A DNA stretch of 64,000 nt from Octopus bimaculoides. Taxonomy: Eukaryota. Where the stretch lies: NCBI RefSeq assembly GCF_001194135.2, contig NC_068986.1, forward strand, positions 1,337,039-1,401,038. Reading direction: 5' to 3'. Shown one piece after another: positions 8,547 through 61,455 of the stretch; the first letter of the stretch is position 1, and the number at the start of each line of letters is the position of its first letter. The notes under the pieces were generated by a model. It saw only the letters and a program-made list of their open reading frames with translations. It was not told where the DNA came from and did not search any database. Made by a program: the position numbers and the translations under genes.

Positions 8547-8618
8547 CGCAGGAGTGGCTGTGTGATAAGTAGCTTGCTTGCCAATCACATGGTTCCGGGT
8601 TCATTCCCACTGCGTGGC
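8545..8618 (+). mobile_element. SINE family A head, cut by an assembly gap
   Basis: ggcgcaggagtggctgtgtgataag..ggttccgggttcattccc, with A- and B-box-like motifs. Confidence 0.8.
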
Positions 8619-8953
8619 NNNNNNNNNNNNNNNNNNNNNNNNNNNNNNNNNNNNNNNNNNNNNNNNNNNNNNNNNNNNNNNNNNNNNNNNNNNNNNNNNN
8701 NNNNNNNNNNNNNNNNNNNNNNNNNNNNNNNNNNNNNNNNNNNNNNNNNNNNNNNNNNNNNNNNNNNNNNNNNNNNNNNNNNNNNNNNNNNNNNNNNNNN
8801 NNNNNNNNNNNNNNNNNNNNNNNNNNNNNNNNNNNNNNNNNNNNNNNNNNNNNNNNNNNNNNNNNNNNNNNNNNNNNNNNNNNNNNNNNNNNNNNNNNNN
8901 NNNNNNNNNNNNNNNNNNNNNNNNNNNNNNNNNNNNNNNNNNNNNNNNNNNNN
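8619..8953. other. Assembly gap (N run)
   Basis: N run ending in (TA)n. Confidence 1.
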
Positions 8954-8990
<37 letters not shown>

Positions 8991-8995
<5 letters not shown>

Positions 8996-9450
8996 GGTAT
9001 GGTGAATAATTGTCATCTAAATTATGCAAAAATGAAAATAACACTGATATCTCATTTAAACTGATATATTTACCAAAATTACATAAAAATATCTTGAAAT
9101 ACTAAAGAGTAAATTTATTCAATAAAGGCGTCAACCATGGCCTCTGGATGACTTCAGAATCCCCTGCAACTCTTCTGGATGGACTCTTTGTTTGAGTTGG
9201 TGAATGCAGTTACAAGGAGTTTTGTTGGTCTTTCACTCAACTGTTCTCTACACATAATATTCAATGGGGTTGCAGTCTGGGGAGTTAGGCAACCAGATGT
9301 TAGGGGTGATGTGGTCACAGAATTTGTCTGACAGCCATGACTGGGTTCTCCTGCTTGTGTGGCATGGTGCCAAACATAAGGTCTTTCAGCAGCTACCCTG
9401 CTGACCCAGGGCAGCACAACTTCCTCCAGGCACTTGATGTAGGAAGGTGA
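8991..9450 (-). mobile_element. Tc1/mariner-family transposon 3' remnant
   Basis: Minus translation YIKCLEEVVLPWVSRVAAERPYVW...TPNIWLPNSPDCNPIEYYV (the WPPNSPDLNP motif); CAGGGT-type terminus after (TA)n at 8991. Confidence 0.85.
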
Positions 9451-22768: not shown

Positions 22769-23330
22769 NNNNNNNNNNNNNNNNNNNNNNNNNNNNNNNN
22801 NNNNNNNNNNNNNNNNNNNNNNNNNNNNNNNNNNNNNNNNNNNNNNNNNNNNNNNNNNNNNNNNNNNNNNNNNNNNNNNNNNNNNNNNNNNNNNNNNNNN
22901 NNNNNNNNNNNNNNNNNNNNNNNNNNNNNNNNNNNNNNNNNNNNNNNNNNNNNNNNNNNNNNNNNNNNNNNNNNNNNNNNNNNNNNNNNNNNNNNNNNNN
23001 NNNNNNNNNNNNNNNNNNNNNNNNNNNNNNNNNNNNNNNNNNNNNNNNNNNNNNNNNNNNNNNNNNNNNNNNNNNNNNNNNNNNNNNNNNNNNNNNNNNN
23101 NNNNNNNNNNNNNNNNNNNNNNNNNNNNNNNNNNNNNNNNNNNNNNNNNNNNNNNNNNNNNNNNNNNNNNNNNNNNNNNNNNNNNNNNNNNNNNNNNNNN
23201 NNNNNNNNNNNNNNNNNNNNNNNNNNNNNNNNNNNNNNNNNNNNNNNNNNNNNNNNNNNNNNNNNNNNNNNNNNNNNNNNNNNNNNNNNNNNNNNNNNNN
23301 NNNNNNNNNNNNNNNNNNNNNNNNNNNNNN
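22769..23330. other. Assembly gap (N run)
   Basis: N run flanked by (TA)n. Confidence 1.
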
Positions 23331-23331
23331 N

Positions 23332-23372
<41 letters not shown>

Positions 23373-25013
23373 TACAAAGATGTATATACATACGTAGTGA
23401 AATAAAAATGAAACTATTGAAAGGGAAACAAAATAAAAGTGAAACTATTATATCACATTACAACAGAAATGTTATTTTTTCACTTTTGGCATGTAATACC
23501 GAAACAGTGTAAGAGATTGCTCTGGGCTTGCATTAAGTAAGAAGTTTAAAAGTTTTCTCACCCATGACACTCCATGGACCCTAAGTAAAGCATGTTTAAA
23601 ATTTGAATGAAATTGGTTGGGTAGTTCTAGCGTTTTAGTGATGCACACGTACACACAGACAGACACATACATTATAAGTTTTATATATATAGATATATAT
23701 AAACATGTATGATTGTATGACTTAGAAACAGTTTACATGAATGACTTACATTACTATATGCCTTTATGCATATTTGTTTAGAAGTTCTTTCTTGAGTCTC
23801 CTGTATATTATAATACATTTTTATATTCTTCATTAAATTTATTCTTTAAAACATAAGTTTATTTATTTATATGAAGACTTATTTTCCAATTCTATAACTT
23901 TCAATCATTTTATAGTAATGCATTAAAAACCTACATGTGGTGAAAGCATATTAGCAGGTGCCAATAATTTTTGTTGCTGTGAAGAGTGAAAATTCTTGAT
24001 ATTTCAGGCATAGATCCTTAAACCTCATGGGAACTAAACTTATTGACATGTACATTCTGGCATTTTATTAACATTGTTGTCAACACAGATTTTCTGCCGT
24101 TTCCTCAGATTTCAAATTTTACACTTAATCAATACAAAGCACTTACATTTTTCATTACTTGAAAACCATATTTGTTTCTTCTGCCTCGTGGTAAGAACAA
24201 CATTTTATTTTTAGCACTGCTTGTTGCCATAATTTGATTATCAAATGACAGTTTGCAGATTTGTAATTTTAACACAAACTTTCTGAAAGATTATATTATC
24301 TCATTCTCTCCCTAATGGAAATTTTCAACCAGTCAAGAGTGGCTAACTGCAATCTAAATGCAGAATAATTGGTTTTAAATTTAGTTTGTTTTGTTTTGTT
24401 TTTGCTTTTGTTCTTGTTCTGTTTTTCTTCACTGGAGTGAAAAAATAATGAGATGAAAGTGCCAAGCCAAGCAACAGCAAGATTTGTTTGAACTGATAAC
24501 AGCCATTCAGGGAATGTATAGAGTTTTGTTCTGTAATTAAACTTTGCTGCAATAATAAAGAAACTAGTACCAGTTTCAGTTTGCAAACTAGCTAATAACG
24601 TGTGTGTGTGTGTGTGTGTGCCTTTATTTGAAGGTATGTGGCCAGGTGATTAGGTTGTTGTATTCATGATCACAAGATCATGATTTCAATTCTGACTCAG
24701 TGGTGCATTGTATTCTTGCTTCTTCATTTCACAATGCTTCAGTCCACTCAGCTGTAAATGAATAACTTTGTAATGGACTGGTGTCCCATTCTTGGAATAA
24801 TGTTGGGATCTTAGTTACTTATATGCCATGAAAACTGGGTTACCAGAATTATGAGTTCTAGGGCTCAGGACAGTAATGCCCAAGGGTTTTGCTTTCTCTC
24901 TAGGCACAGGTGTGGCTGTGTGGTAAGAAGTTTGCTTCCCAACTACATGGTCTTGTGAGTGTATTTGGCAGACAGAAACTGAAAGTAGCCTGTTGTATTT
25001 ATATGCATGTGTA

Positions 25014-25240: not shown

Positions 25241-25560
25241 CTCATGTCTCCCAACAGGGCTGTTTAAACCTTTGGCATTTAAACAGCTATATCTGACTAA
25301 ACTGGCAACCCCACCAGGCCTGCTTTGTGAGGTGGGTGCTTGTTGAACACCCTGCGGGACAAAAAATAAGACCTGCCAAAGGGCGGAGGAACTACAATGT
25401 AGTCACTGGCCATTCAACTACATGTGTTTGTGGAGTGTTTGTGTGTGTGTATTGTATATATTGCATTTTAAACTGTGTATGTGCATATTGTATATATTTT
25501 ATTTCAGCATGTGTGTGTACATATTGTATATTGTGTTCTTAAATTGTATATATATTGTAT

Positions 25561-27007
25561 GGCGGCTTAGCTTCTAAGCCCAGCGGAACTGCTACCACTG
25601 ATGGGAGAAGGGGCAAAGGTGGGTATCTGACACCTCAAAACCAGTTGCTTCAGGCAGGTGGGGGCTTGTCAACCCAGGAGGGCAGCCCACCTGGGGGAAG
25701 GGAAACCCTGATTTCAAACCTCTGTCATCTTGTGGGATACCTGGTCACAGGGAAGGCTTCAGGAGTAAACCTTAAGGAAAAATCAGGAGTCAGAGCCCCT
25801 AAAGCAGCTTGATGTTGACTTCAACTTCATCCTGGCTGCTCCTGCAACCATGTTGGCACCAAACTGTAGCAGCCCACTGTTCCTTTGGATTCGTCAGCAA
25901 GGTGGAGAAGGGGGGAAAAGTGCATGGGCAACAACCTGTTCTCCATACTACATTGCCCTGGCTCACATCCGTCCACGCCATCATTAAACATGCACACCTG
26001 CACCTGGAGAGGAAACTCCAGCTTCACCATTTATTTGATGTCAACACAACACAGGAAGCAGCAGGTACTGGTTATAAGCCTTTACTCAATTGGCGTAGAG
26101 TGTGGCACCAGGGGTTGCTTCTGTCGGTGGGAGAGATCTTCGAGTCTCATTGGACAGCTACCACCCGCCTCGAGTTACGCAGACCCCAGCCAGTAAGGTG
26201 TTGTCCTGCTGTGGCTTGCTTTCCCCATTGGGTGCATGAGGGATTAGGAGAACATCCGACAAGCAGATTGTCGACTACCGAACCAGGTAAAAGCAGAAAA
26301 GCTATCAAAAAGTGACCAGTTCTAAAACTGGAACATTGGAATGTCCGGACAACGATGCCTGGCCTCTCTCAGGACCTTCAGGACATCATTGACACCAGGA
26401 AAACAGCAGTCATCAACAAGGAGCTCAAGAGACTGACATATCAATATCGCTGCTCTGCAGGAAACATGGTTAGCCAATGAAGGCACACTGAGGGAGAGAG
26501 ACTACACATTCCTCTGGAAGGGAAGAGCTCTGATGAGCTCAGAGAACATGGAGTAGGCTTTGCAACAAAGAACAGCTTGCTGAGAATGGGAAAACCAGGC
26601 ATCAGTGGCTCTGAGTGGCTCCTAACTCCCCACCTCAACACTACCAAAGGCCCTGTCACCCTCGTCAGTGTGTATGCCCCAACAGTGTTCACTGCCCCGG
26701 AAGCTAAGGACAAGTTCTACGAGAACCTTGTATCCACTATCAAGAGCATCCCCATTAGTGAACAACTATGGATTGGTGAAGAGAAGCTGTCAGCTGCAGC
26801 TGTGGAAACTTGAGCCCAATGTAAGGGATCAACAGCCGACAGACCAGAATCCATACACAGATGCGATCTATGTGACCGAGACTGTCATTCTCACATTGGT
26901 CATCATAGCCACAGGAGGCACTGCTCAAGCCGAGCGACCCAAACAAGACAACAAATGGACAGACGTGATACCCATGGTCAGCCATGACTGAACGTGGCCT
27001 AAGAGGA
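25561..27007 (+). mobile_element. Internally deleted RTE (BovB-like) LINE: 5' UTR, APE endonuclease and C-terminal Cys/His tail, no RT
   Basis: HWNVRT..., INIAALQETWL, EHGVGFA and VSVYAPT...KDKFYENL (26320-26768) are joined directly to GEEKLSAAA...HRCDLCDRDCHSHIGHHSHRRHC. Confidence 0.88.
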
Positions 27008-28227: not shown

Positions 28228-28630
28228 CTCCTATATATATGTACCTATGCATACAGGTAAACATGCATATACATGTAACATCCAACTGTTCACTCTCGGA
28301 ATAGAGGATCTGTAACTATAATTTCTATGTTTTGAAATTATTTTTTATATTATTATTTAATGGTTTTATATGTAAAATTTAAATCAGTTTCAAATTATAT
28401 AAATCCCATTTAATATAAATGTTAAAATAAATAGCAAAAAAAATCAATATTCTAAATGTAAAAAAAGAAATATTTATGTTACATTATTAATTATCAATGT
28501 ATAATATTGAAACTGTATTCCCTAAGCTGTTCATCATTATGTAATATTATCATTGCTATTATTTGCTAATTAACTTGCAGATGAATTATCAAATTTTCAG
28601 TGTCTAACATGCAGTTGTATTTTATCTCAG

Positions 28631-29684
28631 TTGCAGACCACATAAAACAGTCGTCGTCAATACCACCCCCTCCACCTCCACCAGCAGCCAGTTCTTATTG
28701 GAAGACTTCTTCATCTCGCTCCAACCGTCACTCAACGTGTGTAAGTTTCAACTCCTCCTCGTCTCCTTCTGCATCACCCCACAATTCTGCTTCTCTGAGC
28801 ATTGGAGCCGGCTTGCCAGCACATACGATTTCATTACCAGCTTCTGCAGTGAGAATTTTGCCCCCACTAACAACAAACATTATACCGCCAACACCTCCTC
28901 CACCACCGACACCACCTGCCCCATTCAGTTTCCCATATTTAGCAGAGAAATCTGCGACAATTCCAGGAGCTTCCAATAGTAATCAGCCATCGACTTCAAG
29001 TTCATTGAATGCTGCTGAAGAGGACAAGCAAAATGCAGAACATTCTTCCACTTCTCCAGGTCAAAGAATGAATCCTTCACAGGTCCTTCCATCTTCTGAC
29101 TATCGTAGCCGTCCAATAGAAGGTTCTGAAGACTTCTATTCCTGGTCTAGCAAAGGAGATTGCAGTGGGCGTTCATCTATTGAGAAAATCCAGATAAATA
29201 AAAAGTTTGCTCGCAAAATGGATCCTGTGCAAATTAGTAAAATTAACAATAACTACACAACCTCCATCCAAGTAGGTTCCAAGAAACTCTCAGAAGCCAA
29301 TGCTGAGAAGCTGCCAAATCACTTTGATAAAGAAGAGGAGGAGATTGCTCGAATGACTTCAGACATGCCCAAATACTTACACTTAAGTAACCCGAGTAGA
29401 GAAATGGGCTGTTCTCCTTCGCCTCCACCGCCTCCACCACCACCACCACAATCTCTTATTGAAGAGCTGGAGAAAAGCTTTTCATCATCACAGGACACTG
29501 ACAGCCTCTCTATGCAAAGTGATACTGATGACCTACCACCGCCACCACCTCCACCACCTCCTCCTCCTCCTCCGCCGCCGCTGCCTCCACCTCCCCTCTT
29601 TCAACATTCTTTACCATCATCATCCTCTCCTATGTCTGCTGCTTGTGAAGTAAACAGAACTGCACCGTCATTGTCCAAATCAAG
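28631..29684 (+). CDS. Espin/forked-like gene, large proline-rich exon B
   Basis: Lies within ORF 28600-29688 with four poly-Pro tracts. Branch-point-like CTAAC at 28604-28608, acceptor tttatctcag|, donor AAG|gtagat (phase 2). Confidence 0.9.
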
Positions 29685-30169
29685 GTAGATATACATACCT
29701 TCTAAATTTCTTTTCTTTTAACATTTTTCTGTTTTCTTTTTTAAAATAACAATTATCATAAATTTTCAACAGAAACATCATTATTAAGCATATCTTCATT
29801 AAATGCATATACATTCATATTTTTTCAACACCCTATTATTTAGTGACGATATTTACAATGTGATTCTAAAAGTCACTATGTAGTCTTGAAGTAAGTTTTT
29901 GCAGAGCTAAGTTTATAATTTAGCTTTGAATTCAAGCTCCAGCTGTAAGCGTTTCACTTCCAACTCTAATACACATCAGGAAGGTAAAGATCTGATTATT
30001 TTGCCTTTATCTATAAACATGAGACATTTGAGCGTGCCATACATAGTCGCACACATGCACACATATATTTAATTTGTTCTAATACATTTCCTAGTCATCA
30101 TTTTCACATCCATTTTGCTATGCTTGTATGGGTTGATTAGATTCATCAACACAGCACTTTGTCACTTGT

Positions 30170-33895: not shown

Positions 33896-34117
33896 NNNNN
33901 NNNNNNNNNNNNNNNNNNNNNNNNNNNNNNNNNNNNNNNNNNNNNNNNNNNNNNNNNNNNNNNNNNNNNNNNNNNNNNNNNNNNNNNNNNNNNNNNNNNN
34001 NNNNNNNNNNNNNNNNNNNNNNNNNNNNNNNNNNNNNNNNNNNNNNNNNNNNNNNNNNNNNNNNNNNNNNNNNNNNNNNNNNNNNNNNNNNNNNNNNNNN
34101 NNNNNNNNNNNNNNNNT
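33896..34117. other. Assembly gap (N run)
   Basis: N run after (TA)n; boundaries approximate. Confidence 1.
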
Positions 34118-41500: not shown

Positions 41501-42396
41501 CTTGCACCTAAGTTAAAAATCAATATTTGGTATATCTATGGTTTGACAGAGTGGCAGAAATGGTAAAGTGCCATATTAAATTACAATGTTTAATTATTGA
41601 CATCCTCTTAATATTCTCAAATTAAATCATGCTACTTCAACAAGAACAGTAAAGGCTAATCTTCTGGAGGAAGTCAGAATAAGGCCAAAATATGTCTAGA
41701 GTTGTCTTCCATACTTGCCAAAGAAAGGAAAATAATATTGATCATTGGCTAATATTGATATTATCTCATCCCTTTATTAGTAAATGTTAATATGTCACTT
41801 ATCATTTTTCATACATTTCTTTCTTTTTTTATATACATATTTAAGAATTATGAATTATAGGTAGATAACTTATACCAGGGTGAAGGGTGACAAGTTCTAA
41901 TAAGCACTTTGTGGGAAGAATCATATGCAAAATTCTTTAAAAAATATATTTCTTACAATTTAGTGGTATTACTTTGTATAGTAAGAAAATGTGGGGAAAA
42001 TGGAAAAATTGTCATGTGAGGAAAATGGGAAAATTTGATGGTGATGCATAATTTGCAAACAATATTACACATTTTTCTGAAAATATTAGATAGAAATTGG
42101 TTTAATAAATTTTATAAGGAAACTCTTAATTAAAAAAAATATGCTTAATCCTGTAATTTTCAGTATATTTTGTTGTTTTTTTTTTTTTCATGGGTATTTT
42201 ATCTTTTCATATTATATACCCATATTATATACCCATAGAAATGTGTTCATAATCTTGATATGTCTTGGTAAATATCTTTGGTATGTTTCAAAATTATTCA
42301 AATATTGTTTCTTTATTCATAAATATACATTAATCTTGTAAGACTGATTGTATTAATGTATTCTATTTAGGTTTTCCTGAACTGAAAGTGTAGAAG

Positions 42397-42688
<292 letters not shown>

Positions 42689-42692
42689 TTTA

Positions 42693-42890
42693 GGCAGTGA
42701 GCTGACAGAATTGTTGTCATGCTGAGTAAAATGCTTACTGGTATTTCGCCTGTCACTATGTTCTCAGTTCAAATTCCACCAAGGTTGACTTTGCCTTTCA
42801 TCCTTTCGGGATCGATAAAATAAGTACCAGTTGTTGTAATCAACTCATCCTTTCCCTCCAGATTGCTGCCCTTGTGGCAAAATTGAAACC
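42693..42890 (+). mobile_element. SINE family B (other copies about 21925-22230, 43228-43435, 52113-52327 on +; 60620-60745 on -)
   Basis: ggcagtgagctgacagaa..gttcaaattccaccaaggttgactttgcctttcatcc..taagtaccag. Confidence 0.85.
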
Positions 42891-43755
42891 ATTCTTATCA
42901 TTATTATTAGATTAATGATTATGGTTTTTAGGTGTTTTATCAATAATTAGGTTTTAGAAAAGAAAACATTTTTTAAATATTTAATTTCTTCTATTTTATA
43001 TTCTATTAATTGTAATTTAATTCTTATTAGTTATTGGACACTAAGTTTGTTATTATTGTTAATACCCATAGAATAGTCTCAGTAATCTCTGTTGGGGACA
43101 CTTGGGAATCTAACTGGAAATATAACTGGGTCCTACTGATAGGACCCTGTAGAGGAGGTGCCTGAGGATTCCACCCCAACAACCCTCCCAGGAATAGGGG
43201 ACAGAAAAGATGGACGGTTGAGAATATAAGGATAGTGGCAAAATCAGTTGAATGATACAAAATATTTTGTGGTATCTAATTACATATCTCAATGCTCTGA
43301 GTTCAAATCCTGCTGTGATCAACTTTGCTATTCATCCTTTTGGGGTTGATAAAATGTACACCAGTTGAGTACTGAGATTGACTTAACTGGCTATGTCCAC
43401 CTTCTACATTTGAATCCTTATGTTAGAAACAAATATTATGTAACCTGAAGTTAGTACTAAACTAAAAGCAAAATATGTCATATTTTGCACCATTCAGATT
43501 TTCTAATCTGAGTGCAATCTGAACATCTATGGTCATGAACCTTCAGCCTTCTTCAGAGCCACATGCATTTTCTAGTTTATTCAAATTGAACCTCGATATT
43601 CCAATATGTATAAAGCATTAGAAAATATCAAATAATTATGATTAAATTAAGTAATTAAGCAAAAAATATTACAGGTTAACTAACATTATTCTCTGGTCAA
43701 GCAATTCCAGATTCTTAACCATTGTCAGTGGAAGTATAGCTTTTATCATTCCTTG

Positions 43756-43806
<51 letters not shown>

Positions 43807-44637
43807 TAAAGCTGGAAAATGAAATTAGAAAAAATATATTTGTTTATAATCATTTATTTATTCTTCAGTTTCATTTAAATTTAGTTGTTCTAGGATAAAA
43901 TTATTGTATTTTTATTTATGTCTATTTTTTTTTTAAACTCTTGAACTTTTAAATGTGGTTGATTCCTTTGCTGGTACCAAGAAAGAGATATTTATTCTCT
44001 ATTATTTCTGTAATTTTAGGTAATAAATAAGATTTATAATTTCTCAAAGAAAATGTAAAAAAAAACGTCTTGTAATTGTGTCTACAGAAATTTTTTTTTG
44101 CATCTTTTTTTTTTTCTCTGTCATTCCAATGTCTTTCACATACTAATTTTTGGCCAAAGATGATGAAGTTTGAGATTTATAGTAGGTAAAGTTCAGTTTG
44201 AAGACTTCAAATAGATAAAAGAAAAATTTTCCACCTGACAGCAAGTGTCTTCATCAATTTTCTTCTGTTTGATTTATATAATCAGAGTTATTCATTCACT
44301 CAAAACATTTTTATTTACTCTTTGAACTCTCTCACAATTATCAAGATGTCTTCTATTCCATAAGAAGAAACAAATTCCTGCAAAAGTTGCATTTTAGAGC
44401 ATTAATATTTATCTTTTTTAAAGTCAACTACTTCATAATAGCTTCCTTTAAAGTTATTTATCTCAAGTTCTTTTATTTTTTCATGTTTGTTTCTATTACA
44501 ACATTAATACAACAATTTCTTTAGATATTTTCAAGGTATTTTTTGGAATTGCTTTTCTTTTTTGTCATTGTTTTTTTGTGTATGTTCTCATGTGCTTTTG
44601 TTTTACTGTTAATTATTTTTATTTTTTAAAGTTCCAG

Positions 44638-45181
44638 AAATTCACTGGGTTTCACTGTCAACGAAGCTAAAATGAACAGTCCGAGCAGAGCATCGATTCC
44701 AAACGCTTCCCCTGGAAGCTCCAGTGCTGATCTAATTGCAGAGATCACTGCAAAAGGAAAGTCTACTTTGAAGAGAACTCCACGACCAGAGCCTACTGTG
44801 ATGATGTACACTGAAAAAGGCATGGTCCCTGTAACAACTACCTCACCATTGTCAGCTGCAGTTTCTCCTACATATTCAACTGCAGCACCAACGACAACAA
44901 CCACTACCACAACAACAACAACAGATATTAGCACTTCTTCTAACAACAACAACAGTACTGTAACCAGTATTACTACTACCACTACTACCACTCGTAGTAG
45001 TAGTAATATCAAGTTGAATGACACAAGGACAAATCCTACAACAAATTTCTCACCAAATGTATCAGCAAACACAAGCCATGTCATTACTGCCAGCACGCCT
45101 ATTGCCACAATCACCAACAACACCAGTGAGGCACCAACCCCAGTGCCAGCAGTTGCTCCACAGCTGCTGCCTAAAGCAAAG
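44638..45181 (+). CDS. ESPN: Espin/forked-like gene, WH2 exon C (spliced form)
   Basis: Phase-2 acceptor ttccag|A (alternative aaag|T at 44632). Encodes ADLIAEITAKGKSTLKRTP, which resembles the vertebrate espin WH2 (SELLAEIKAGKSLKPTP), then a Thr-rich linker. Internal donor AAG|gtagga is phase 0, matching the exon at 51840. Confidence 0.85.
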
Positions 45182-46567
45182 GTAGGAAATGGACACTATG
45201 AAGATACTGTTAGTAGTACTTCATTGCGTCGACAGAAGTTTCTGGAAAGTCATAAAAATAATTCTCTTATTGAAATAGAAGAAGAGGTGTCTGTTAATGA
45301 AAAAACAATATCCCCAACACATACAGGGGACAGTAGTCAGGAAGACAGTGAGACAGATAAAAAACAAACAGAGGATACTTCAAAAGAAATAAAGTCAACA
45401 GTAGATAGTAAAACTTTTCATTCGGGAAATAGTTGGGAAAGTAAGCTTCTTCCTTCTGGAAGGAAATTACCAATGTTGAATGGAAAAATATCTACATTTT
45501 GGCAAATGGGAGGGAAGAGAAGCTTTGAACTTCCTAAAAAGAAGCATAATATTTTGTCTAGAATAAGTCAAGAAATCATAGAAATACCATCAGATGTTAA
45601 TAATAAAAGTAATGAAACGAAGCAAAAGAAGATTGATGACTGTGATGTAAAAACCTTATTGAAAAAGCCTAGTGTGGGTTTAAATGGGAAAGTAAAAGAA
45701 GCTACATTAGTTTCTCCACAAACCAATAATGGCATAAAAAGGAATGTAAAAGAGTCTAGGTTAGGCCGACCAGAGACATTTAAAAGTCTAAGAGGAAGAC
45801 TCAAAGAATCTAGTCTGTCATCAGAAACATCCACAGAATCCAGATATACAAAGTCTTTGGGGATTTCTGAAAATAGATTCTCTTTACAATCTAGTTTTTC
45901 TTCAGAAACATCTACTGAATCCAAGAACTTTAGGTCAATGGATTCCTATGAGAGAAGATTAATAAAACAGTCCAGTATGTCTTCAGAAGCATCAACAGAT
46001 TCTAGAAGTATAAGATTTGCTGATGTCTCTGATGATGTAATGGTTAAAGATTATAGTATATCATCGGAAATGTCTCTAGATTCTAAGCATTTCAAATATG
46101 ATGACAGTGAGACATCTGCTGGTAATGAGACTGATGAGTCTGAATCAGATTATGCTTATGGAGGAGTTTATGATAGATGTAGTGGCCGAAGGATTGGACC
46201 GATCGTTAATGAAATCAAATACAAAGCAGAATCATTAAAAAAGGAAACCTATAATTTTACAAAGAGCTTAGTTAACTTCAATCAAGGATTATATGTGGAA
46301 GATGTTGATGATGATTATGATGATTGCTATTATTATTCTGACTACGATAACCAAAATTATATTGAGGAAAGGAACAAAACAATGAGAAACCACATGCTTG
46401 AATTTAATATATGTAAACAGCCAATAGAGCATCCATTGAAAACGAGGCAATTTAGAAGTCTTGTGGATAGAAGACATATTCAGATTGGCACCAACTTTAG
46501 AGATTACGGTCAGACAAGATATCAGAATTTGCCGAGGAAATCACATTATGAAACCTTCATTAATTGA
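45182..46567 (+). CDS. Alternative terminal extension of exon C (461 aa plus TAA), isoform lacking the bundling module
   Basis: 1383 nt stop-free in AT-rich DNA beyond the donor; 81-nt periodic repeats; AATAAA at 46674-46679. Confidence 0.75.
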   Translation, partial: VGNGHYEDTVSSTSLRRQKFLESHKNNSLIEIEEEVSVNEKTISPTHTGDSSQEDSETDKKQTEDTSKEIKSTVDSKTFHSGNSWESKLLPSGRKLPMLNGKISTFWQMGGKRSFELPKKKHNILSRISQEIIEIPSDVNNKSNETKQKKIDDCDVKTLLKKPSVGLNGKVKEATLVSPQTNNGIKRNVKESRLGRPETFKSLRGRLKESSLSSETSTESRYTKSLGISENRFSLQSSFSSETSTESKNFRSMDSYERRLIKQSSMSSEASTDSRSIRFADVSDDVMVKDYSISSEMSLDSKHFKYDDSETSAGNETDESESDYAYGGVYDRCSGRRIGPIVNEIKYKAESLKKETYNFTKSLVNFNQGLYVEDVDDDYDDCYYYSDYDNQNYIEERNKTMRNHMLEFNICKQPIEHPLKTRQFRSLVDRRHIQIGTNFRDYGQTRYQNLPRKSHYETFIN

Positions 46568-46673
46568 ATAGGTTTCTCATTTAAGCTTAGGAAATGATCG
46601 TTTATCCTTGTTAAGAACAATTCTTGTAGCTTAATCCAAAGAAAATTTCATTAAAATGTCTAGAAATCTATTT

Positions 46674-46679
46674 AATAAA
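46674..46679 (+). promoter_or_regulatory. Candidate polyadenylation signal of the alternative terminal exon
   Basis: AATAAA 106 nt after the TAA, followed by U-rich ttattgtattttt. The hexamer is common in AT-rich DNA. Confidence 0.45.
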
Positions 46680-46719
46680 TTTATTGTATTTTTGCTGCCC
46701 GGTCCAGGAATCAAACCCA

Positions 46720-46830
46720 CAATCATAAGGTTGTGAGTTTGATTCCTGGGCCAGAAAGTGCATTGTGTCCTTGAGCAAGGCACTTCATTTCACATTGCTC
46801 CAGTGTACTTAGCTGGCAAAAATGAGTACC
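46720..46830 (+). mobile_element. 5'-truncated tRNA-SINE of a third family, with an inverted duplication of its B-box region
   Basis: gagtttgattcctggg..gtccttgagcaaggcact..gctccagt..agctggcaaaaatgagtacc; related copies at about 7230-7300 (-) and 24640-24770. Confidence 0.65.
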
Positions 46831-51839: not shown

Positions 51840-52007
51840 GAACGATCAGAGCGAACAATACTGGAGGGTAACTTTGATCCTAAGAATTTCTTAGATCAAG
51901 TTCCTGATAAGGATGCTGCTGGGCGAGTCATTCCTCCATGGAAACGGCATGTATTAGCACGGCAGATGGCAGAGAAGGCAAAATCAGAAGAAGAAGAAAA
52001 GAAAAGA
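51840..52007 (+). CDS. ESPN: Espin actin-bundling module exon D (ERSERTILEGNFDPKNFLDQVPDKDAAGRVIPPWKRHVLARQMAEKAKSEEEEKKR)
   Basis: Acceptor tttcttattag|G, donor AGA|gtaaaa; 168 nt, phase 0/0. Resembles the espin/forked segment GRPIPEWKRQVMVRKLQ...EEEE as recalled. Confidence 0.92.
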
Positions 52008-53203: not shown

Positions 53204-53283
53204 CAGGCAGAAGAAGAAGCCCGTTTTAAAAATGTTCCCGCTTGGAAACGAGCTCTTATGCAGAAGAAATCAGCCGAAAACAA
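53204..53283 (+). CDS. ESPN: Espin actin-bundling module exon E (QAEEEARFKNVPAWKRALMQKKSAEN-)
   Basis: NAGNAG acceptor ttcttcag|cag|, donor AA|gtaagc. Resembles espin [21 protein letters not shown]. Confidence 0.92.
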
Positions 53284-53578
53284 GTAAGCATATACTGCGG
53301 AAATTAAAAAATTCCTTATCTGTTTCTTTAAAAGTTGATTAATTTTCTGTAAAGTAAAAATGTGTTTAACAGAGTTCAGGAAATAAAATTCAACATAGAC
53401 CTGCATTTTTCATCATATTCTATGTATATAATTGAGATCCTTGCTTTTATCTTCCTAAACAACAACGTTGGTTTCTTCTAGAGGATAAAAACATTTTTTG
53501 TTGATTTAGTATACTGTAACTAAATCAGATTAATCTAGTGTTTTATAGCATAATCTTTACCTTTGCTTCTAGCCTTAA

Positions 53579-58451: not shown

Positions 58452-60052
58452 GACACCCAACATTAATGTAGTAAATTAAGAGATATTTAAATCTATCATA
58501 ACAAAAGATAAAAAACAAAAACTCTCTCATCACAGCTGTAGCTCAGTAATTAATCCCAAATTGGGGACCTGTTTAGATGCCTTTGTAGGTAAGGACATTG
58601 ATTAGTAAGTAGGGATTTAATGCACTGGGAGAAGGTTTCAATCTGTACCTCTCCCAAGGAATTACAAGAGCAGTGGAGTGCAGGGAGTAAATACATTATT
58701 TTTTTTTAAATTTCAAATTTTGTCTTGTTATTGTATTTATTCTTCCTGTTTCTCCTCTACTAGATCCTTAACTTCTTTACCCAATGCAATCTCTCTCAGA
58801 ATTTATTTTCTGGAATTCACTTCCAGTGACAGATGTTTGCTGCAGACATTCAAAGTGAACAGCAGTTACATCATTCTCATCAGATTTGGAAGACCTTCAT
58901 AAATTATCATCATCATCTTTTAACATCCACTTTTCCATGCTTGCATGGATTGGAGAGAATTTGTTAATGCAGATTTTCTACAGCTGGATGCCTATCCTAT
59001 CACCAACCCTCACCTATTTTCAAGTAAGATAATATTTACCATGAAACACATGTTTTTACAGAAGACTGGAAATAACGGATACTGCTTGCATGATGGTGAC
59101 ATTTGTTTTACAACTCTCATGTGAAGTCAAGGAGATACACACAAATACCACAATAGGCCTCTTTCAGTTTCTGTCTATCAAGTCCACTTACGGGCTTTTG
59201 TCAGCTTGGAGCCATAGTAGAATACATTTGCCCAAGGTGCCATTTGGTGGGACTGAACTTAAGACATTGTGGTTGGGAAGCAAACATCTTACAATATCTG
59301 CACCTGCAAATTATATATAAAAAGAAAACATGAGCAGTAGTAGAGAGATGTTTTGCATTTCTTTTTTCAGACCTATCTAGCATCATTCAGCAGAGAGAGA
59401 GAAGTGAGTCACAAGAGAATTTTTTGCTTTTATGATGCAAAAGAGTTTATCCATGTTGTCAGGAAAAGTAAGGGGGGGGGGAGAGGGATAACATAAACGG
59501 ATGGACTTCCAGAAATTGGGAATACTATACAATATCATGCAATATACTGGAGTCTGTATTGAGCAAAACAAACCTAGTTTATGAAGTTGATTAATTTGCA
59601 TACATTGTGTTAAAAAACAGTTTTGTTCTTTACTGTTTTTTTATGTAGATTCATAAAGATTAAACAAATTCTGCTTTAGAATTGCATTAATTTGTACCTA
59701 TGTCTCTACAATAAAACCATGATCTTTACTTTTCTTTGTTTAATTTTTCATCCTATTGTATGCACAGTATGACTTATTTTAAGAATTTCAAGCAGATTAA
59801 TAAATATTTAACAGACCCTGCTTTAGAAATGCATTAATTCAAATCCATCATGTAAAATTTAGCTGCTTACTTTTCATAGTTTATTTTATATTTTAAGTAT
59901 ATATTTAGGCTGTTTTCAGAAAACTGGAAAATCCAGTCCACTTCTGGTCACAAATTTGCTGGATATTTTGGTGTGGCTTTGTACAATGGTTGTGATGAAG
60001 ACAATAAGACTCAATAAAAAATTCATAAATACTTTATTACAAGAGAAAAAAA

Positions 60053-60165: not shown

Positions 60166-61011
60166 CTGTAGAAATGAAACAGTGATTTGAAATGATGAAA
60201 TTTTATAATTTCAGAACAGACAGTAATCTCTTAAGAAATGTTTACAAATGAAATATATATATATGCAAGCAATTAATTTTGTAACTGAACGAATTTGAAT
60301 AGATAAACTGGTGTAATAGTGAAGCAGAAACCCGTGTCCATAGCTCTCCTCTTGGTTTATATAAATAAATACATACATAAAAGACTGGTCTTTTATTTAT
60401 TGGCATGTCAATTTCAGAGAAATTCTTGAGTCTTGAGACTGCCTCACCTTCTCATTTGGAGTTGGTCACAATTGCCACCAGGAGTTTGTTTATCTTCTCT
60501 CAAAGTGAAAATAATTTCAATCTCTTTGTATTTGTTCAACACATGCATTTCATCATTGTGGATGTTTGGAATCCTGCATAAGCATTGGATGCTTAACCAC
60601 AATGGATCATTAGTGAATACACTATTGCACCCAAAAAGATGAATGGTAAAGTCAATCTCTGCTGAATTTGAACTCAGAATGTAGCGGCAGACGAAATACC
60701 ACTAAGCATTTCGCCTGGCATGGTAATGTTTCTGCCAGCTCGCTGCCTTATCACAGGCTCCAACCTGTTCTGGCAAGGTTTCTACAGCTGGATGACCTTC
60801 CTAATGCCAACCACTCTGAGAGTGTAGTGGGTGCTTTTACGTGCCACCGGCACAGGGTCCAGTTAGGCAGCACTAGCATCTATATATATATATATATATA
60901 TACTTTTATTGTTTTCATTTACTTGTCTCAGTCAATTGACTGTGTCCATGCTGGAGCACTGCCTTTTAGTTGAAGAAACCCGACCCCTGGACTTATTTTT
61001 TGTAAGCCTGG

Positions 61012-61325
61012 NNNNNNNNNNNNNNNNNNNNNNNNNNNNNNNNNNNNNNNNNNNNNNNNNNNNNNNNNNNNNNNNNNNNNNNNNNNNNNNNNNNNNNNNN
61101 NNNNNNNNNNNNNNNNNNNNNNNNNNNNNNNNNNNNNNNNNNNNNNNNNNNNNNNNNNNNNNNNNNNNNNNNNNNNNNNNNNNNNNNNNNNNNNNNNNNN
61201 NNNNNNNNNNNNNNNNNNNNNNNNNNNNNNNNNNNNNNNNNNNNNNNNNNNNNNNNNNNNNNNNNNNNNNNNNNNNNNNNNNNNNNNNNNNNNNNNNNNN
61301 NNNNNNNNNNNNNNNNNNNNNNNNN
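61012..61325. other. Assembly gap (N run) inside a minus-strand family A SINE, in the MRPS18A intron
   Basis: N run; SINE sequence on both sides. Confidence 1.
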
Positions 61326-61455
61326 ATCCACTCACAAGGCTTTGGTTGGCCTGTGGCTATAGCAGAAGACACTTGCCCAAGGTGCCACACAGTGGGACTG
61401 AACTCGGTACCATGTGGTTGGGAAGCAAGCTTCTTACCACACAACCATGCCTGTG

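What the first reader, a model, noticed from the sequence alone, without database searches (positions are those of the whole stretch)
44638..46679. Espin-like gene with a donor-versus-read-through switch that swaps the actin-bundling module for a 461-aa tail
Seen: the WH2 exon has an internal donor (AAG|gtagga, 45181/45182) in the right phase to join the three bundling-module exons (124 aa). The same frame also stays open for 1383 nt past the donor to TAA 46565-46567, followed by AATAAA. A stop-free run this long is very unlikely in neutral AT-rich intron. Known: espins bind G-actin through WH2 and cross-link F-actin through a C-terminal module of similar size. Inference: two mutually exclusive isoform classes exist, a bundler (693 aa from the exons found) and a WH2-containing non-bundler (1030 aa) that could act as a scaffold or competitor. 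I do not recognise the tail as a described espin region.
Basis: partly seen in the sequence, partly recalled or inferred. Interest (0 to 1): 0.72.

Follow-up and report, generated by a model that had tools for sequence, protein, structure and literature searches.

The report
Conserved alternative tail in espin-like gene
An exon of an espin-like actin-regulator gene, probably from an octopus, continues past a splice site into 461 further codons that are kept intact and under purifying selection in a related species. The gene therefore very probably makes a version that lacks the actin-bundling end, although no RNA data were available to show the switch.

Summary
The core observation holds. The frame is stop-free from 44630 to 46564. 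The best donor-like site in that run is AAG|GTAGGA at 45181/45182, in phase 0, which matches the acceptor of the first bundling-module exon at 51840. The frame then runs 1383 nt to a stop at 46565-46567, which is TGA, not TAA. AATAAA lies at 46674-46679. Chance openness is about 1e-17.

The new evidence is one orthologous genomic contig from a related species (Logan SRR11869394, about 12% intron divergence). It keeps the whole frame, the donor, the stop and the AATAAA.
- The tail is 94.7% identical, against 87.6% for the upstream intron.
- All three tail indels are multiples of 3.
- 52 of 73 substitutions fall at codon position 3, and dN/dS is 0.105 (P about 4e-18).

So the tail is real coding sequence translated in frame with the WH2-like exon. 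It is single-copy, has no Pfam, PDB or library homologue, and looks mostly disordered.

The donor-versus-read-through switch is still an inference. I found no transcripts and no annotation. The mechanism is of a known kind, a composite terminal exon.

The parts
28637..29684 (+). Upstream proline-rich exon, with poly-Pro tracts such as PPPPPPP and PPPPPPPPPPPPPPPLPPPP. It ends AAG|GTAGAT with two bases of a codon.
   Evidence: A 367-codon open frame spans 28585-29685. Acceptor and donor were read. Its end phase fits the one-base start of the exon at 44638, and also the AG six bases upstream. The exact acceptor (28631 or 28637) is not settled.
44638..45181 (+). Part of the WH2-like exon common to both predicted products. 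It holds the WH2-like motif and then a Thr/Asn/Ser-rich low-complexity stretch.
   Evidence: 95.75% identical to the orthologous contig L001, with 2 indels of 3 and 9 nt and dN/dS of 0.21. The 34 nt between the acceptor and the first ATG (44672) are unchanged, against 87.6% identity in the intron.
44726..44779 (+). WH2-like / beta-thymosin-like motif ADLIAEITAKGKSTLKRT.
   Evidence: Read from the translation and identical in P0001. The hydrophobic helix and LKRT spacing resemble WH2 and thymosin-beta4, which is my recollection. Pfam reports nothing for this peptide even at E<=10.
45179..45187 (+). Internal 5' splice site AAG|GTAGGA. The intron would start at 45182, in phase 0.
   Evidence: It is the best donor score among all GTs in 44640-46564, at 8.5 bits. 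The next phase-0 candidates score 5.3 or less. The 9-mer is identical in L001. Only 26 of 3552 GTs in the window score as high.
45182..46564 (+). 461-codon read-through coding extension, 'the tail'.
   Evidence: 94.7% identity to L001. Three indels, all of 3 nt. Substitutions by codon position are 12/9/52. Nei-Gojobori counts are dN 0.0216 and dS 0.2055, giving omega 0.105. Each third of the tail is separately significant. There are no homologues in 1.84 billion representative proteins other than the orthologue P0001, and none in Pfam or the PDB.
45800..46123 (+). Four tandem 27-aa Ser-rich acidic repeats, consensus xKQSSxSSETSTESRxF.
   Evidence: Protein alignment A1 has six invariant columns. 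Repeats 1 and 2 are still detectable at DNA level as an 81-nt-offset self-match. They are conserved in P0001.
46148..46564 (+). Most constrained, aromatic/acidic and helix-prone C-terminal segment of the tail.
   Evidence: The last third of the tail has omega 0.046, with 22.5 synonymous against 5.5 non-synonymous changes. The only predicted helices are at tail residues 339-369, 390-407, 435-447 and 452-460, at low confidence, pLDDT 50-62 at best.
46565..46567 (+). Stop codon TGA of the read-through frame.
   Evidence: It sits at the same position in L001.
46674..46679 (+). Candidate poly(A) signal AATAAA, 107 nt after the stop, followed by the T/GT-rich TTTATTGTATTTTTG.
   Evidence: It is identical in L001. 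It is weak evidence alone because the hexamer is frequent in this AT-rich window.
51840..52007 (+). Bundling-module-like exon 1: ERSERTILEGNFDPKNFLDQVPDKDAAGRVIPPWKRHVLARQMAEKAKSEEEEKKR.
   Evidence: Only phase 0 is open. The in-frame TAG of the acceptor closes the frame upstream. The donor AGA|GTAAAA is weak at 0.5 bits. Pfam gives a sub-threshold Phostensin_N hit with two matched stretches (best stretch residues 30-50, which hold the first P-W-K-R motif), E = 0.008.
53204..53287 (+). Bundling-module-like exon 2, QAEEEARFKNVPAWKRALMQKKSAEN(K), with an in-frame TAA at 53285-87. Alternatively, a GT donor at 53284 in phase 2.
   Evidence: AATAAA at 53382 is a possible 3' end.

Best explanation
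The exon that starts at 44638 is a composite exon of an espin-like gene whose motif order is proline-rich tracts, then a WH2-like motif, then a basic/acidic module with two P-x-W-K-R motifs.

If the internal 5' splice site at 45181/45182 is used, the exon ends after the WH2-like and low-complexity segment. It then joins in phase 0 to the bundling-module exons at 51840 and 53204.

If that site is not used, and the transcript is cleaved and polyadenylated about 1.5 kb into the 6.66-kb intron (near the AATAAA at 46674), translation runs on for 461 codons to TGA 46565. The result is a product with the proline-rich and WH2-like parts but no bundling module. In its place is a largely disordered Ser/Lys/Glu/Asp-rich tail, with four 27-aa repeats and a more constrained helix-prone C-terminus.

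Shown here: the tail is translated sequence under purifying selection, contiguous and in frame with the upstream exon. The donor, stop and AATAAA are conserved, and the phases fit.

Inferred: both outcomes occur from the same pre-mRNA, and the choice is a competition between splicing and intronic polyadenylation. Read-through without early polyadenylation would put the stop far upstream of later exon junctions and probably be degraded. The tail-bearing form would bind actin monomer or profilin but not cross-link filaments.
For: - ORF and signals.
- Chance is excluded, at about 1e-17, and the other frames are full of stops.
- The orthologous genomic contig L001 is collinear with window 43323-46800.
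- Identity is 87.6% in the intron with 20 mostly non-3n indels, 95.8% in the common exon part, and 94.7% in the tail with 3n-only indels.
- dN/dS is 0.105 for the tail. The third-position bias appears from about 45240 to the stop; the bin spanning the donor (45089-45238) has too few changes to show it. Each third of the tail is significant.
- The donor at 45182 is the top-scoring GT in the ORF, is the only strong one in phase 0, and is identical in the orthologue. The stop and AATAAA are also conserved.
- The proline-rich exon's end phase fits the 44638 acceptor.
- The tail is single-copy with no TE signature.
- In vertebrates the bundling module is shared by all espin isoforms, and a separate paralogue, ESPNL, lacks most of it (PMC3953818; PMC4773517).
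Against: - No transcript, junction or 3'-end evidence could be obtained. The protein libraries evidently hold no cephalopod transcript-derived proteins: the bundling-module query found nothing at all, and two DNA scans of metagenome contigs found nothing.
- Conservation of the donor 9-mer is expected anyway at about 95% coding identity, so it adds little.
- AATAAA is frequent, and three copies lie inside the tail ORF.
- Only one orthologue, at modest divergence, was available.
- The bundling exons could not be compared with any orthologue, and their assignment to espin rests on motifs only.
- The end of the bundling module is unresolved.
Confidence: 0.6

Rival explanations
1. The tail-bearing form is the only product of this exon. 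The 'internal donor' is just a Lys-Val-Gly coding triplet run. The downstream bundling-like exons belong to transcripts from another promoter in the 46.7-51.8 kb interval, or they are decaying relics.
For: Nothing shows that the donor is used. Its conservation is explained by coding constraint. The bundling exons have a weak donor (0.5 bits) and an unresolved end. Exons of 56 and 27 codons can stay open by chance at 1-15%, calculated from the stop rate.
Against: The donor is the best of all GTs in 1.9 kb and falls in the one phase the next exon needs. The bundling exon has no start codon of its own near its 5' end, and its acceptor is good. The order WH2 then module matches what vertebrate espins show (PMC3953818). 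Both P-x-W-K-R motifs are intact.
Confidence: 0.2
2. A short independent product also exists, or exists instead. A promoter just upstream of 44638 would drive a 631-aa protein from ATG 44672 (WH2-like motif plus tail), unconnected to the proline-rich exon. This would resemble the short vertebrate espin isoforms that start near the WH2 domain.
For: ATG 44672 opens a complete 631-aa ORF, and the orthologue starts at the same ATG. Vertebrate espin isoforms differ through alternative transcription starts (PMC3953818).
Against: A strong polypyrimidine tract and AG lie directly upstream. Sequence between the acceptor and the ATG is perfectly conserved, the frame is open from 44630, and the phase fits the upstream exon. 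These all suggest an internal exon. This rival would not remove the donor-versus-read-through choice. It only changes the N-terminus.
Confidence: 0.12
3. The tail is a captured transposable-element ORF, or an exon of a nested unrelated gene, that happens to be in frame.
For: It has no recognisable homologue anywhere. The window is rich in repeats. A palindromic repeat-like hairpin sits just downstream.
Against: It is single-copy in the window and has no TE domain. It is at the same position in the other species, with host-gene-like purifying selection that is detectable within about 60 nt of the donor and holds for the first third of the tail on its own. There is no stop between the WH2-like part and the tail in either species.
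Confidence: 0.04
4. The open frame is a chance or neutral feature of the intron.
For: None beyond the AT-rich context.
Against: P is about 1e-17 for openness. The binomial P is about 4e-18 for the deficit of non-synonymous changes. All 5 indels in the ORF are multiples of 3, against 15 indels per kb, mostly non-3n, in the adjacent intron.
Confidence: 0.001

Closest known systems
Vertebrate espin (ESPN) isoforms and the Drosophila forked proteins
   Same: The order of features matches: proline-rich tracts, a WH2-like G-actin motif, then a short Lys/Glu/Arg-rich C-terminal module with repeated P-x-W-K-R motifs. One gene gives several products.
   Different: In vertebrates all isoforms share the C-terminal bundling module and differ at the N-terminus through alternative transcription starts (PMC3953818). 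Here the predicted difference is at the C-terminus and removes the module. No ankyrin repeats lie in this window. The module seen here is 83-85 aa, against the ~14-kDa C-terminal module of vertebrate espins (PMC3953818; about 116 aa by my recollection). No database match confirms homology. That forked is the espin relative is my recollection (Bartles et al. 1998) and was not tested here.
Vertebrate espin-like protein (ESPNL)
   Same: It is an espin relative of about 1000 aa that keeps only a 27-residue stretch of the bundling module, and it modulates or antagonises ESPN-1/myosin-III-driven elongation (PMC3953818; PMC4773517). The predicted read-through product would be a comparable espin without its bundler.
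   Different: ESPNL is a separate paralogous gene, not an alternative 3' end of the same gene. No sequence similarity between its tail and this one was tested, because no ESPNL sequence was on hand.
Composite terminal exons / intronic polyadenylation switches, for example the immunoglobulin mu secreted-versus-membrane choice
   Same: The anatomy is the same. A 5' splice site lies inside an exon, an in-frame extension beyond it ends in its own stop, and a poly(A) signal lies upstream of the next exon. Splicing and cleavage then compete and give alternative C-termini. This comparison is from my own knowledge.
   Different: Here the extension is very long (461 codons) and is the larger of the two alternative ends. 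Use of either path is not demonstrated.
Phostensin (PPP1R18) / taperin N-terminal motif, Pfam PF13916
   Same: The Pfam match has two stretches; the best one (residues 30-50) holds the first P-x-W-K-R motif, and the second stretch probably covers the other. The tail carries one RVxF-like SIRF motif.
   Different: The hit is below Pfam's cut-off, at 17 bits against 23. The motifs sit at the C-terminus and not the N-terminus. An RVxF-like tetrapeptide is easily a chance match.

Membership tests
Espin / forked family | C-terminal actin-bundling module homologous to that of espin | tested here: inconclusive
   Two exons encode a Lys/Glu-rich segment with two P-x-W-K-R motifs. There is no hit in the 5.8-billion-protein search or in the PDB. 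Pfam gives only a sub-threshold Phostensin_N hit. The end of the module is unresolved.
Espin / forked family | WH2 domain upstream of the module | tested here: inconclusive
   The motif ADLIAEITAKGKSTLKRT is present and is conserved in the orthologue. Pfam reports no WH2 or thymosin match even at E<=10.
Espin / forked family | Proline-rich (profilin-binding type) tracts | tested here: met
   Several poly-Pro runs, up to 15 consecutive Pro, lie in the exon at 28637-29684.
Espin / forked family | N-terminal ankyrin repeats (large isoforms only) | tested here: not met
   A regex scan of all six frames for ankyrin-repeat core motifs found none in the window. They may lie upstream of the window, and they are not required for the short isoforms.
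Composite terminal exon (splice versus intronic polyadenylation switch) | A functional-looking 5' splice site inside an exon, in a phase compatible with the next exon | tested here: met
   AAG|GTAGGA at 45181/45182 scores 8.5 bits and is the top GT in the ORF. It is in phase 0, the same as the acceptor at 51840. This is sequence-level evidence only.
Composite terminal exon (splice versus intronic polyadenylation switch) | The extension beyond the donor is translated, meaning open, in frame and selectively constrained | tested here: met
   461 open codons, dN/dS 0.105, 3n-only indels, and the stop conserved in the orthologue.
Composite terminal exon (splice versus intronic polyadenylation switch) | A poly(A) site between the extension's stop and the next exon | tested here: inconclusive
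   AATAAA at 46674-79 with a T/GT-rich downstream stretch is conserved in L001. The hexamer is common in the window, and 3' ends were not observable.
Composite terminal exon (splice versus intronic polyadenylation switch) | Both transcript classes are actually produced | not testable with these tools
   No RNA-seq, cDNA or annotation for this organism is reachable. The protein and DNA collections returned only one genomic contig.

The most novel reading that the evidence does not exclude
An octopod-lineage coding extension with no detectable relatives turns an espin-family filament bundler into a bundler-less, WH2-bearing protein, through a regulated choice between an exon-internal splice site and intronic polyadenylation. 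One cephalopod gene would then do what vertebrates do with two paralogues, ESPN and ESPNL. The tail, with its Ser-rich acidic repeats and a constrained helical C-terminus, would bring a new partner or a phospho-regulated function to sensory-cell actin protrusions.
Probability: 0.3. Interest if true: 0.6.

Novelty: new variant of a known kind. Interest (0 to 1): 0.45.

Why it matters
Espins set the length and thickness of the actin bundles in sensory microvilli and stereocilia. In vertebrates every isoform keeps the bundling module (PMC3953818). A conserved isoform that drops it for a long, selectively maintained tail would show a different way of tuning this machinery, by alternative C-termini and not alternative N-termini or a separate paralogue. 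It would also give a concrete candidate regulator for cephalopod mechanosensory and chemosensory cells. In practical terms, it shows that this 1.4-kb stretch must be annotated as coding and not as intron.

Tried and rejected
1. Pfam scans of the whole exon, the tail and the proline-rich exon gave nothing. A short WH2 peptide also gave nothing.
2. The word-indexed search of 5.8 billion proteins with the 642-aa exon gave only the orthologue P0001. The exhaustive HMMER search of 1.84 billion representatives with the tail gave only P0001. So there are no distant relatives, but these libraries seem to lack cephalopod and other animal proteomes: the bundling-module query found nothing at all. Absence is therefore not evidence of lineage restriction.
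3. An exact look-up of the window's own 631-aa ORF found it is not on record.
4. PDB sequence searches with the module and with the tail gave nothing relevant.
5. Two exact-pattern scans of metagenome contigs, one designed to catch both genomic and spliced forms upstream of the donor, gave no matches.
6. Literature searches for the run accession and for espin in cephalopods gave nothing useful.
7. AlphaFold2 on the single sequence gave pLDDT 41. That is too poor for a fold search, so I ran none.
8. Rfam and ARAGORN around the 3' end gave nothing.
9. The TE and repeat hypothesis for the tail was rejected.
10. A search for a third W-[QKR]-[RK] motif downstream found none.
Full report
**1. What is in the sequence**

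The window is AT-rich eukaryotic DNA with assembly gaps and many microsatellites.

- On the + strand one frame is free of stops from 44630 to 46564, 645 codons. This is by far the longest open run in the window. The next longest, 367 codons at 28585-29685, is another exon of the same gene.
- A good acceptor, ttttattttttaaagttccag|A, ends at 44637. An AG six bases upstream is equally in phase.
- The sequence AAG|GTAGGA lies at 45179-45187, and the GT starts a codon, so the donor is in phase 0.
- The next recognisable exon starts after ttcttattag| at 51840 and is readable only in phase 0.
- From 45182 the frame continues for exactly 1383 nt to a stop at 46565-46567.
- AATAAA is at 46674-46679 and is followed by a T/GT-rich stretch.

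**2. Is it more than chance?**

Local base composition gives a stop probability of 0.07-0.08 per codon. The probability that 461 codons stay open is therefore about 1e-17. In 5 kb of the downstream intron the longest open run is 117 codons, and 2000 shuffles of the tail never exceeded 128. The other two frames of the tail contain 28 and 85 stops.

With my approximate metazoan donor matrix, the site at 45182 is the best of all GTs inside the open frame, at 8.5 bits. It is the only strong one in phase 0, and only 0.7% of all GTs in the window score as high.

The AATAAA is weak evidence on its own. There are 190 copies in the window on both strands, and three lie inside the tail itself.

**3. Comparative evidence**

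A search of 5.8 billion proteins with the 642-aa exon translation returned one protein, P0001. It is 634 aa long and 92% identical over 98% of the query. It is encoded on a 3458-bp Logan contig from run SRR11869394, fetched as L001. L001 is collinear with window 43323-46800, including 1.3 kb of upstream intron and 230 nt beyond the AATAAA. It is therefore orthologous genomic DNA from a related species, not a transcript.

| Region | Coordinates | Identity to L001 | Indels |
|---|---|---|---|
| Upstream intron | 43323-44637 | 87.6% | 20, mostly not multiples of three |
| Common exon part | 44638-45181 | 95.75% | 2 (3 and 9 nt) |
| Tail | 45182-46564 | 94.7% | 3, each exactly 3 nt |
| 3' flank | 46568-46800 | 92.7% | none |

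In the tail, 52 of 73 substitutions are at third codon positions. Nei-Gojobori counting gives 49.5 synonymous and 23.5 non-synonymous changes, so dS is 0.21, dN is 0.022 and omega is 0.105. The common exon part has omega 0.21.

The deficit of non-synonymous changes has a binomial P of about 4e-18 for the whole tail. It is significant in each third separately, at 2e-5, 1e-4 and 1e-11. Read in the other two frames, the same substitutions give omega of about 1.3. The third-position bias appears from about 45240, some 60 nt past the donor, and runs to the stop; the 150-nt bin that spans the donor has too few changes to show it.

The ATG at 44672, the donor 9-mer, the TGA and the AATAAA are all at the same places in L001.

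Conclusion: the tail is protein-coding, it is read in the frame of the exon it extends, and it has been kept by purifying selection since the two species split.

**4. What the tail is**

- It has no Pfam match and no PDB match.
- It has no relative other than P0001 in an exhaustive HMMER scan of 1.84 billion representative proteins.
- It is single-copy in the window. Its only self-match is an 81-nt-offset internal repeat. It is therefore not a dispersed repeat or a recognisable transposable-element ORF.
- It is rich in Ser, Lys, Glu and Asp and has a net charge of about 0.
- It contains four tandem 27-residue repeats, consensus xKQSSxSSETSTESRxF, at 45800-46123.
- It has an acidic/aromatic patch, DDDYDDCYYYSDYD.
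- Its C-terminal third is the most constrained part, at omega 0.046.
- AlphaFold2 on the single sequence predicts disorder up to about residue 335 and four helices after that, all at low confidence with mean pLDDT 41. I ran no fold search on such a model.

**5. The gene around it**

- The 367-codon frame at 28585-29685 carries long poly-proline tracts. It ends AAG|GTAGAT with two bases of a codon, which fits the one-base start of the 44638 exon.
- The exon at 44638 encodes ADLIAEITAKGKSTLKRT, a WH2/beta-thymosin-like motif, followed by a Thr/Asn-rich low-complexity stretch.
- Exons at 51840-52007 and 53204-53283/4 encode a Lys/Glu/Arg-rich segment with two P-x-W-K-R motifs.

This order of features is that of espins as described in PMC3953818. 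The family assignment could not be confirmed by any database, however:
- The window holds no ankyrin-repeat motif.
- Pfam reports no WH2 match.
- The module gives only a sub-threshold Phostensin_N match, E = 0.008, 17 bits against a cut-off of 23.
- The large protein library returned nothing for the module, which shows that it lacks cephalopod and other animal espins.

**6.

The only GT at the end of the second module exon is at 53284-85 (ACAA|GTAAGC). The exon therefore ends in phase 2, and an in-frame TAA at 53285-87 follows at once.

It needs a phase-0, non-GT donor. With the real GT donor it reads Lys-Pro-Ile-stop. No third W-[QKR]-[RK] motif lies downstream in the window.

The module visible here is therefore 83-85 aa. 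It ends either at TAA 53285, with an AATAAA at 53382, or in an exon I could not identify. I did not check the totals of 693 and 1030 aa.

**7. Mechanism**

The anatomy is that of a composite terminal exon.
- If the internal donor is used, the transcript continues to the module exons.
- If cleavage and polyadenylation occur first, about 1.5 kb into the 6.66-kb intron, the mRNA ends after the tail's own stop.

This is the same logic as the immunoglobulin mu secreted/membrane choice, which I cite from my own knowledge. A transcript that retained the intron but was still spliced downstream would carry its stop far upstream of exon junctions and would probably be degraded. A productive tail isoform therefore needs the proximal poly(A) site; this step is inference.

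The selection on the tail shows that read-through mRNAs are made and translated. The intact, phase-compatible module exons and the strong donor argue that splicing also occurs. No RNA evidence was reachable, so the switch remains an inference, at confidence of about 0.6.

Rivals:
- The donor is never used and the module exons belong to other transcripts or are relics (about 0.2).
- An internal promoter gives a 631-aa product from ATG 44672. This would change only the N-terminus (about 0.12).
- A nested gene or captured TE ORF (about 0.04).
- Chance (excluded).

**8. Comparison with what is known, and novelty**

In vertebrates the bundling module is 'shared by all espin isoforms', which differ through alternative transcription starts (PMC3953818). 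A separate paralogue, ESPNL, is about 1005 aa long and keeps only 27 residues of the module. It modulates, and in some settings antagonises, ESPN-1/myosin-III activity.

A single gene that yields both a bundler and a bundler-less product through alternative 3' ends would be a new variant for this family. The mechanism itself is ordinary.

I could not check whether public octopus annotations already list such an isoform. The tail has no detectable relatives, but the libraries searched are poor in animal proteins, so I make no claim that it is restricted to this lineage.

**9. Verdict**

The isoform switch is plausible but unproven. Several details in the finding are wrong: the stop codon, the third module exon and the isoform sizes. 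Interest is moderate.

Noticed in passing
window 46701-46752: There is a near-perfect 22-bp-arm hairpin, GGTCCAGGAATCAAACCCACAA / TTGTGAGTTTGATTCCTGGGCC, with an 8-nt loop. It starts 22 nt after the candidate poly(A) signal. Folding 46690-46765 gives -40.4 kcal/mol and z = -8.1. The orthologous contig keeps it with three changes, two of which preserve pairing. There is no Rfam or tRNA hit. It may be a palindromic mobile element or a structured 3'-end element.
   Followed up: partly
window 53204-53390 and 59371-59496: The second bundling-module exon ends ...GAA AAC AA|GTAAGC, and TAA is in frame immediately after AAG. AATAAA lies at 53382. The 41-aa frame at 59371 contains two strong donor-like sites of its own (GAA|GTGAGT and AAA|GTAAGG) and does not fit the phase. 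The true C-terminal exon of the bundler form is unresolved.
   Followed up: partly
window 45800-46123: Four diverged tandem 27-aa repeats (S-x-SSE-x-S-[TL]-[ED]-S-[RK]) lie inside the tail. Repeat 3 carries an RVxF-like SIRF motif that is conserved in the orthologue. The Ser/acidic pattern suggests phosphorylation clusters.
   Followed up: partly
window 45388, 45602, 45961 (+ strand): Three AATAAA hexamers lie inside the tail ORF. If used as poly(A) signals they would give non-stop transcripts. They are probably just a consequence of the A-rich coding sequence.
   Followed up: no
window 44889-44992: Codon-repeat tracts (CAA/ACA/ACT) encode poly-Thr and poly-Asn in the common exon part. The two in-frame indels relative to the orthologue (3 and 9 nt, at about 44833 and 44942) lie in the Thr/Ser/Asn-rich stretch around these tracts.
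   Followed up: partly
window 42381-42722: This is a trinucleotide microsatellite of about 340 bp. It reads as poly-His, poly-Ser or poly-Ile depending on frame, and it lies in the intron upstream of the WH2-like exon.
   Followed up: no
window 25500-27000: This block has about 50% G+C, against about 33% elsewhere. It has several open frames of 90-170 codons on both strands and no Pfam match. It may be a degraded mobile element.
   Followed up: partly
window about 8600-9000, 22800-23400, 33900-34100, 61000-61350: These are runs of N (assembly gaps), each flanked by TA-rich dinucleotide-type microsatellites that read as IYIYIY.
   Followed up: no
window 45571-45945 (- strand): A 125-codon open frame runs antisense to the tail. 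It has no support beyond being opposite a coding region.
   Followed up: no
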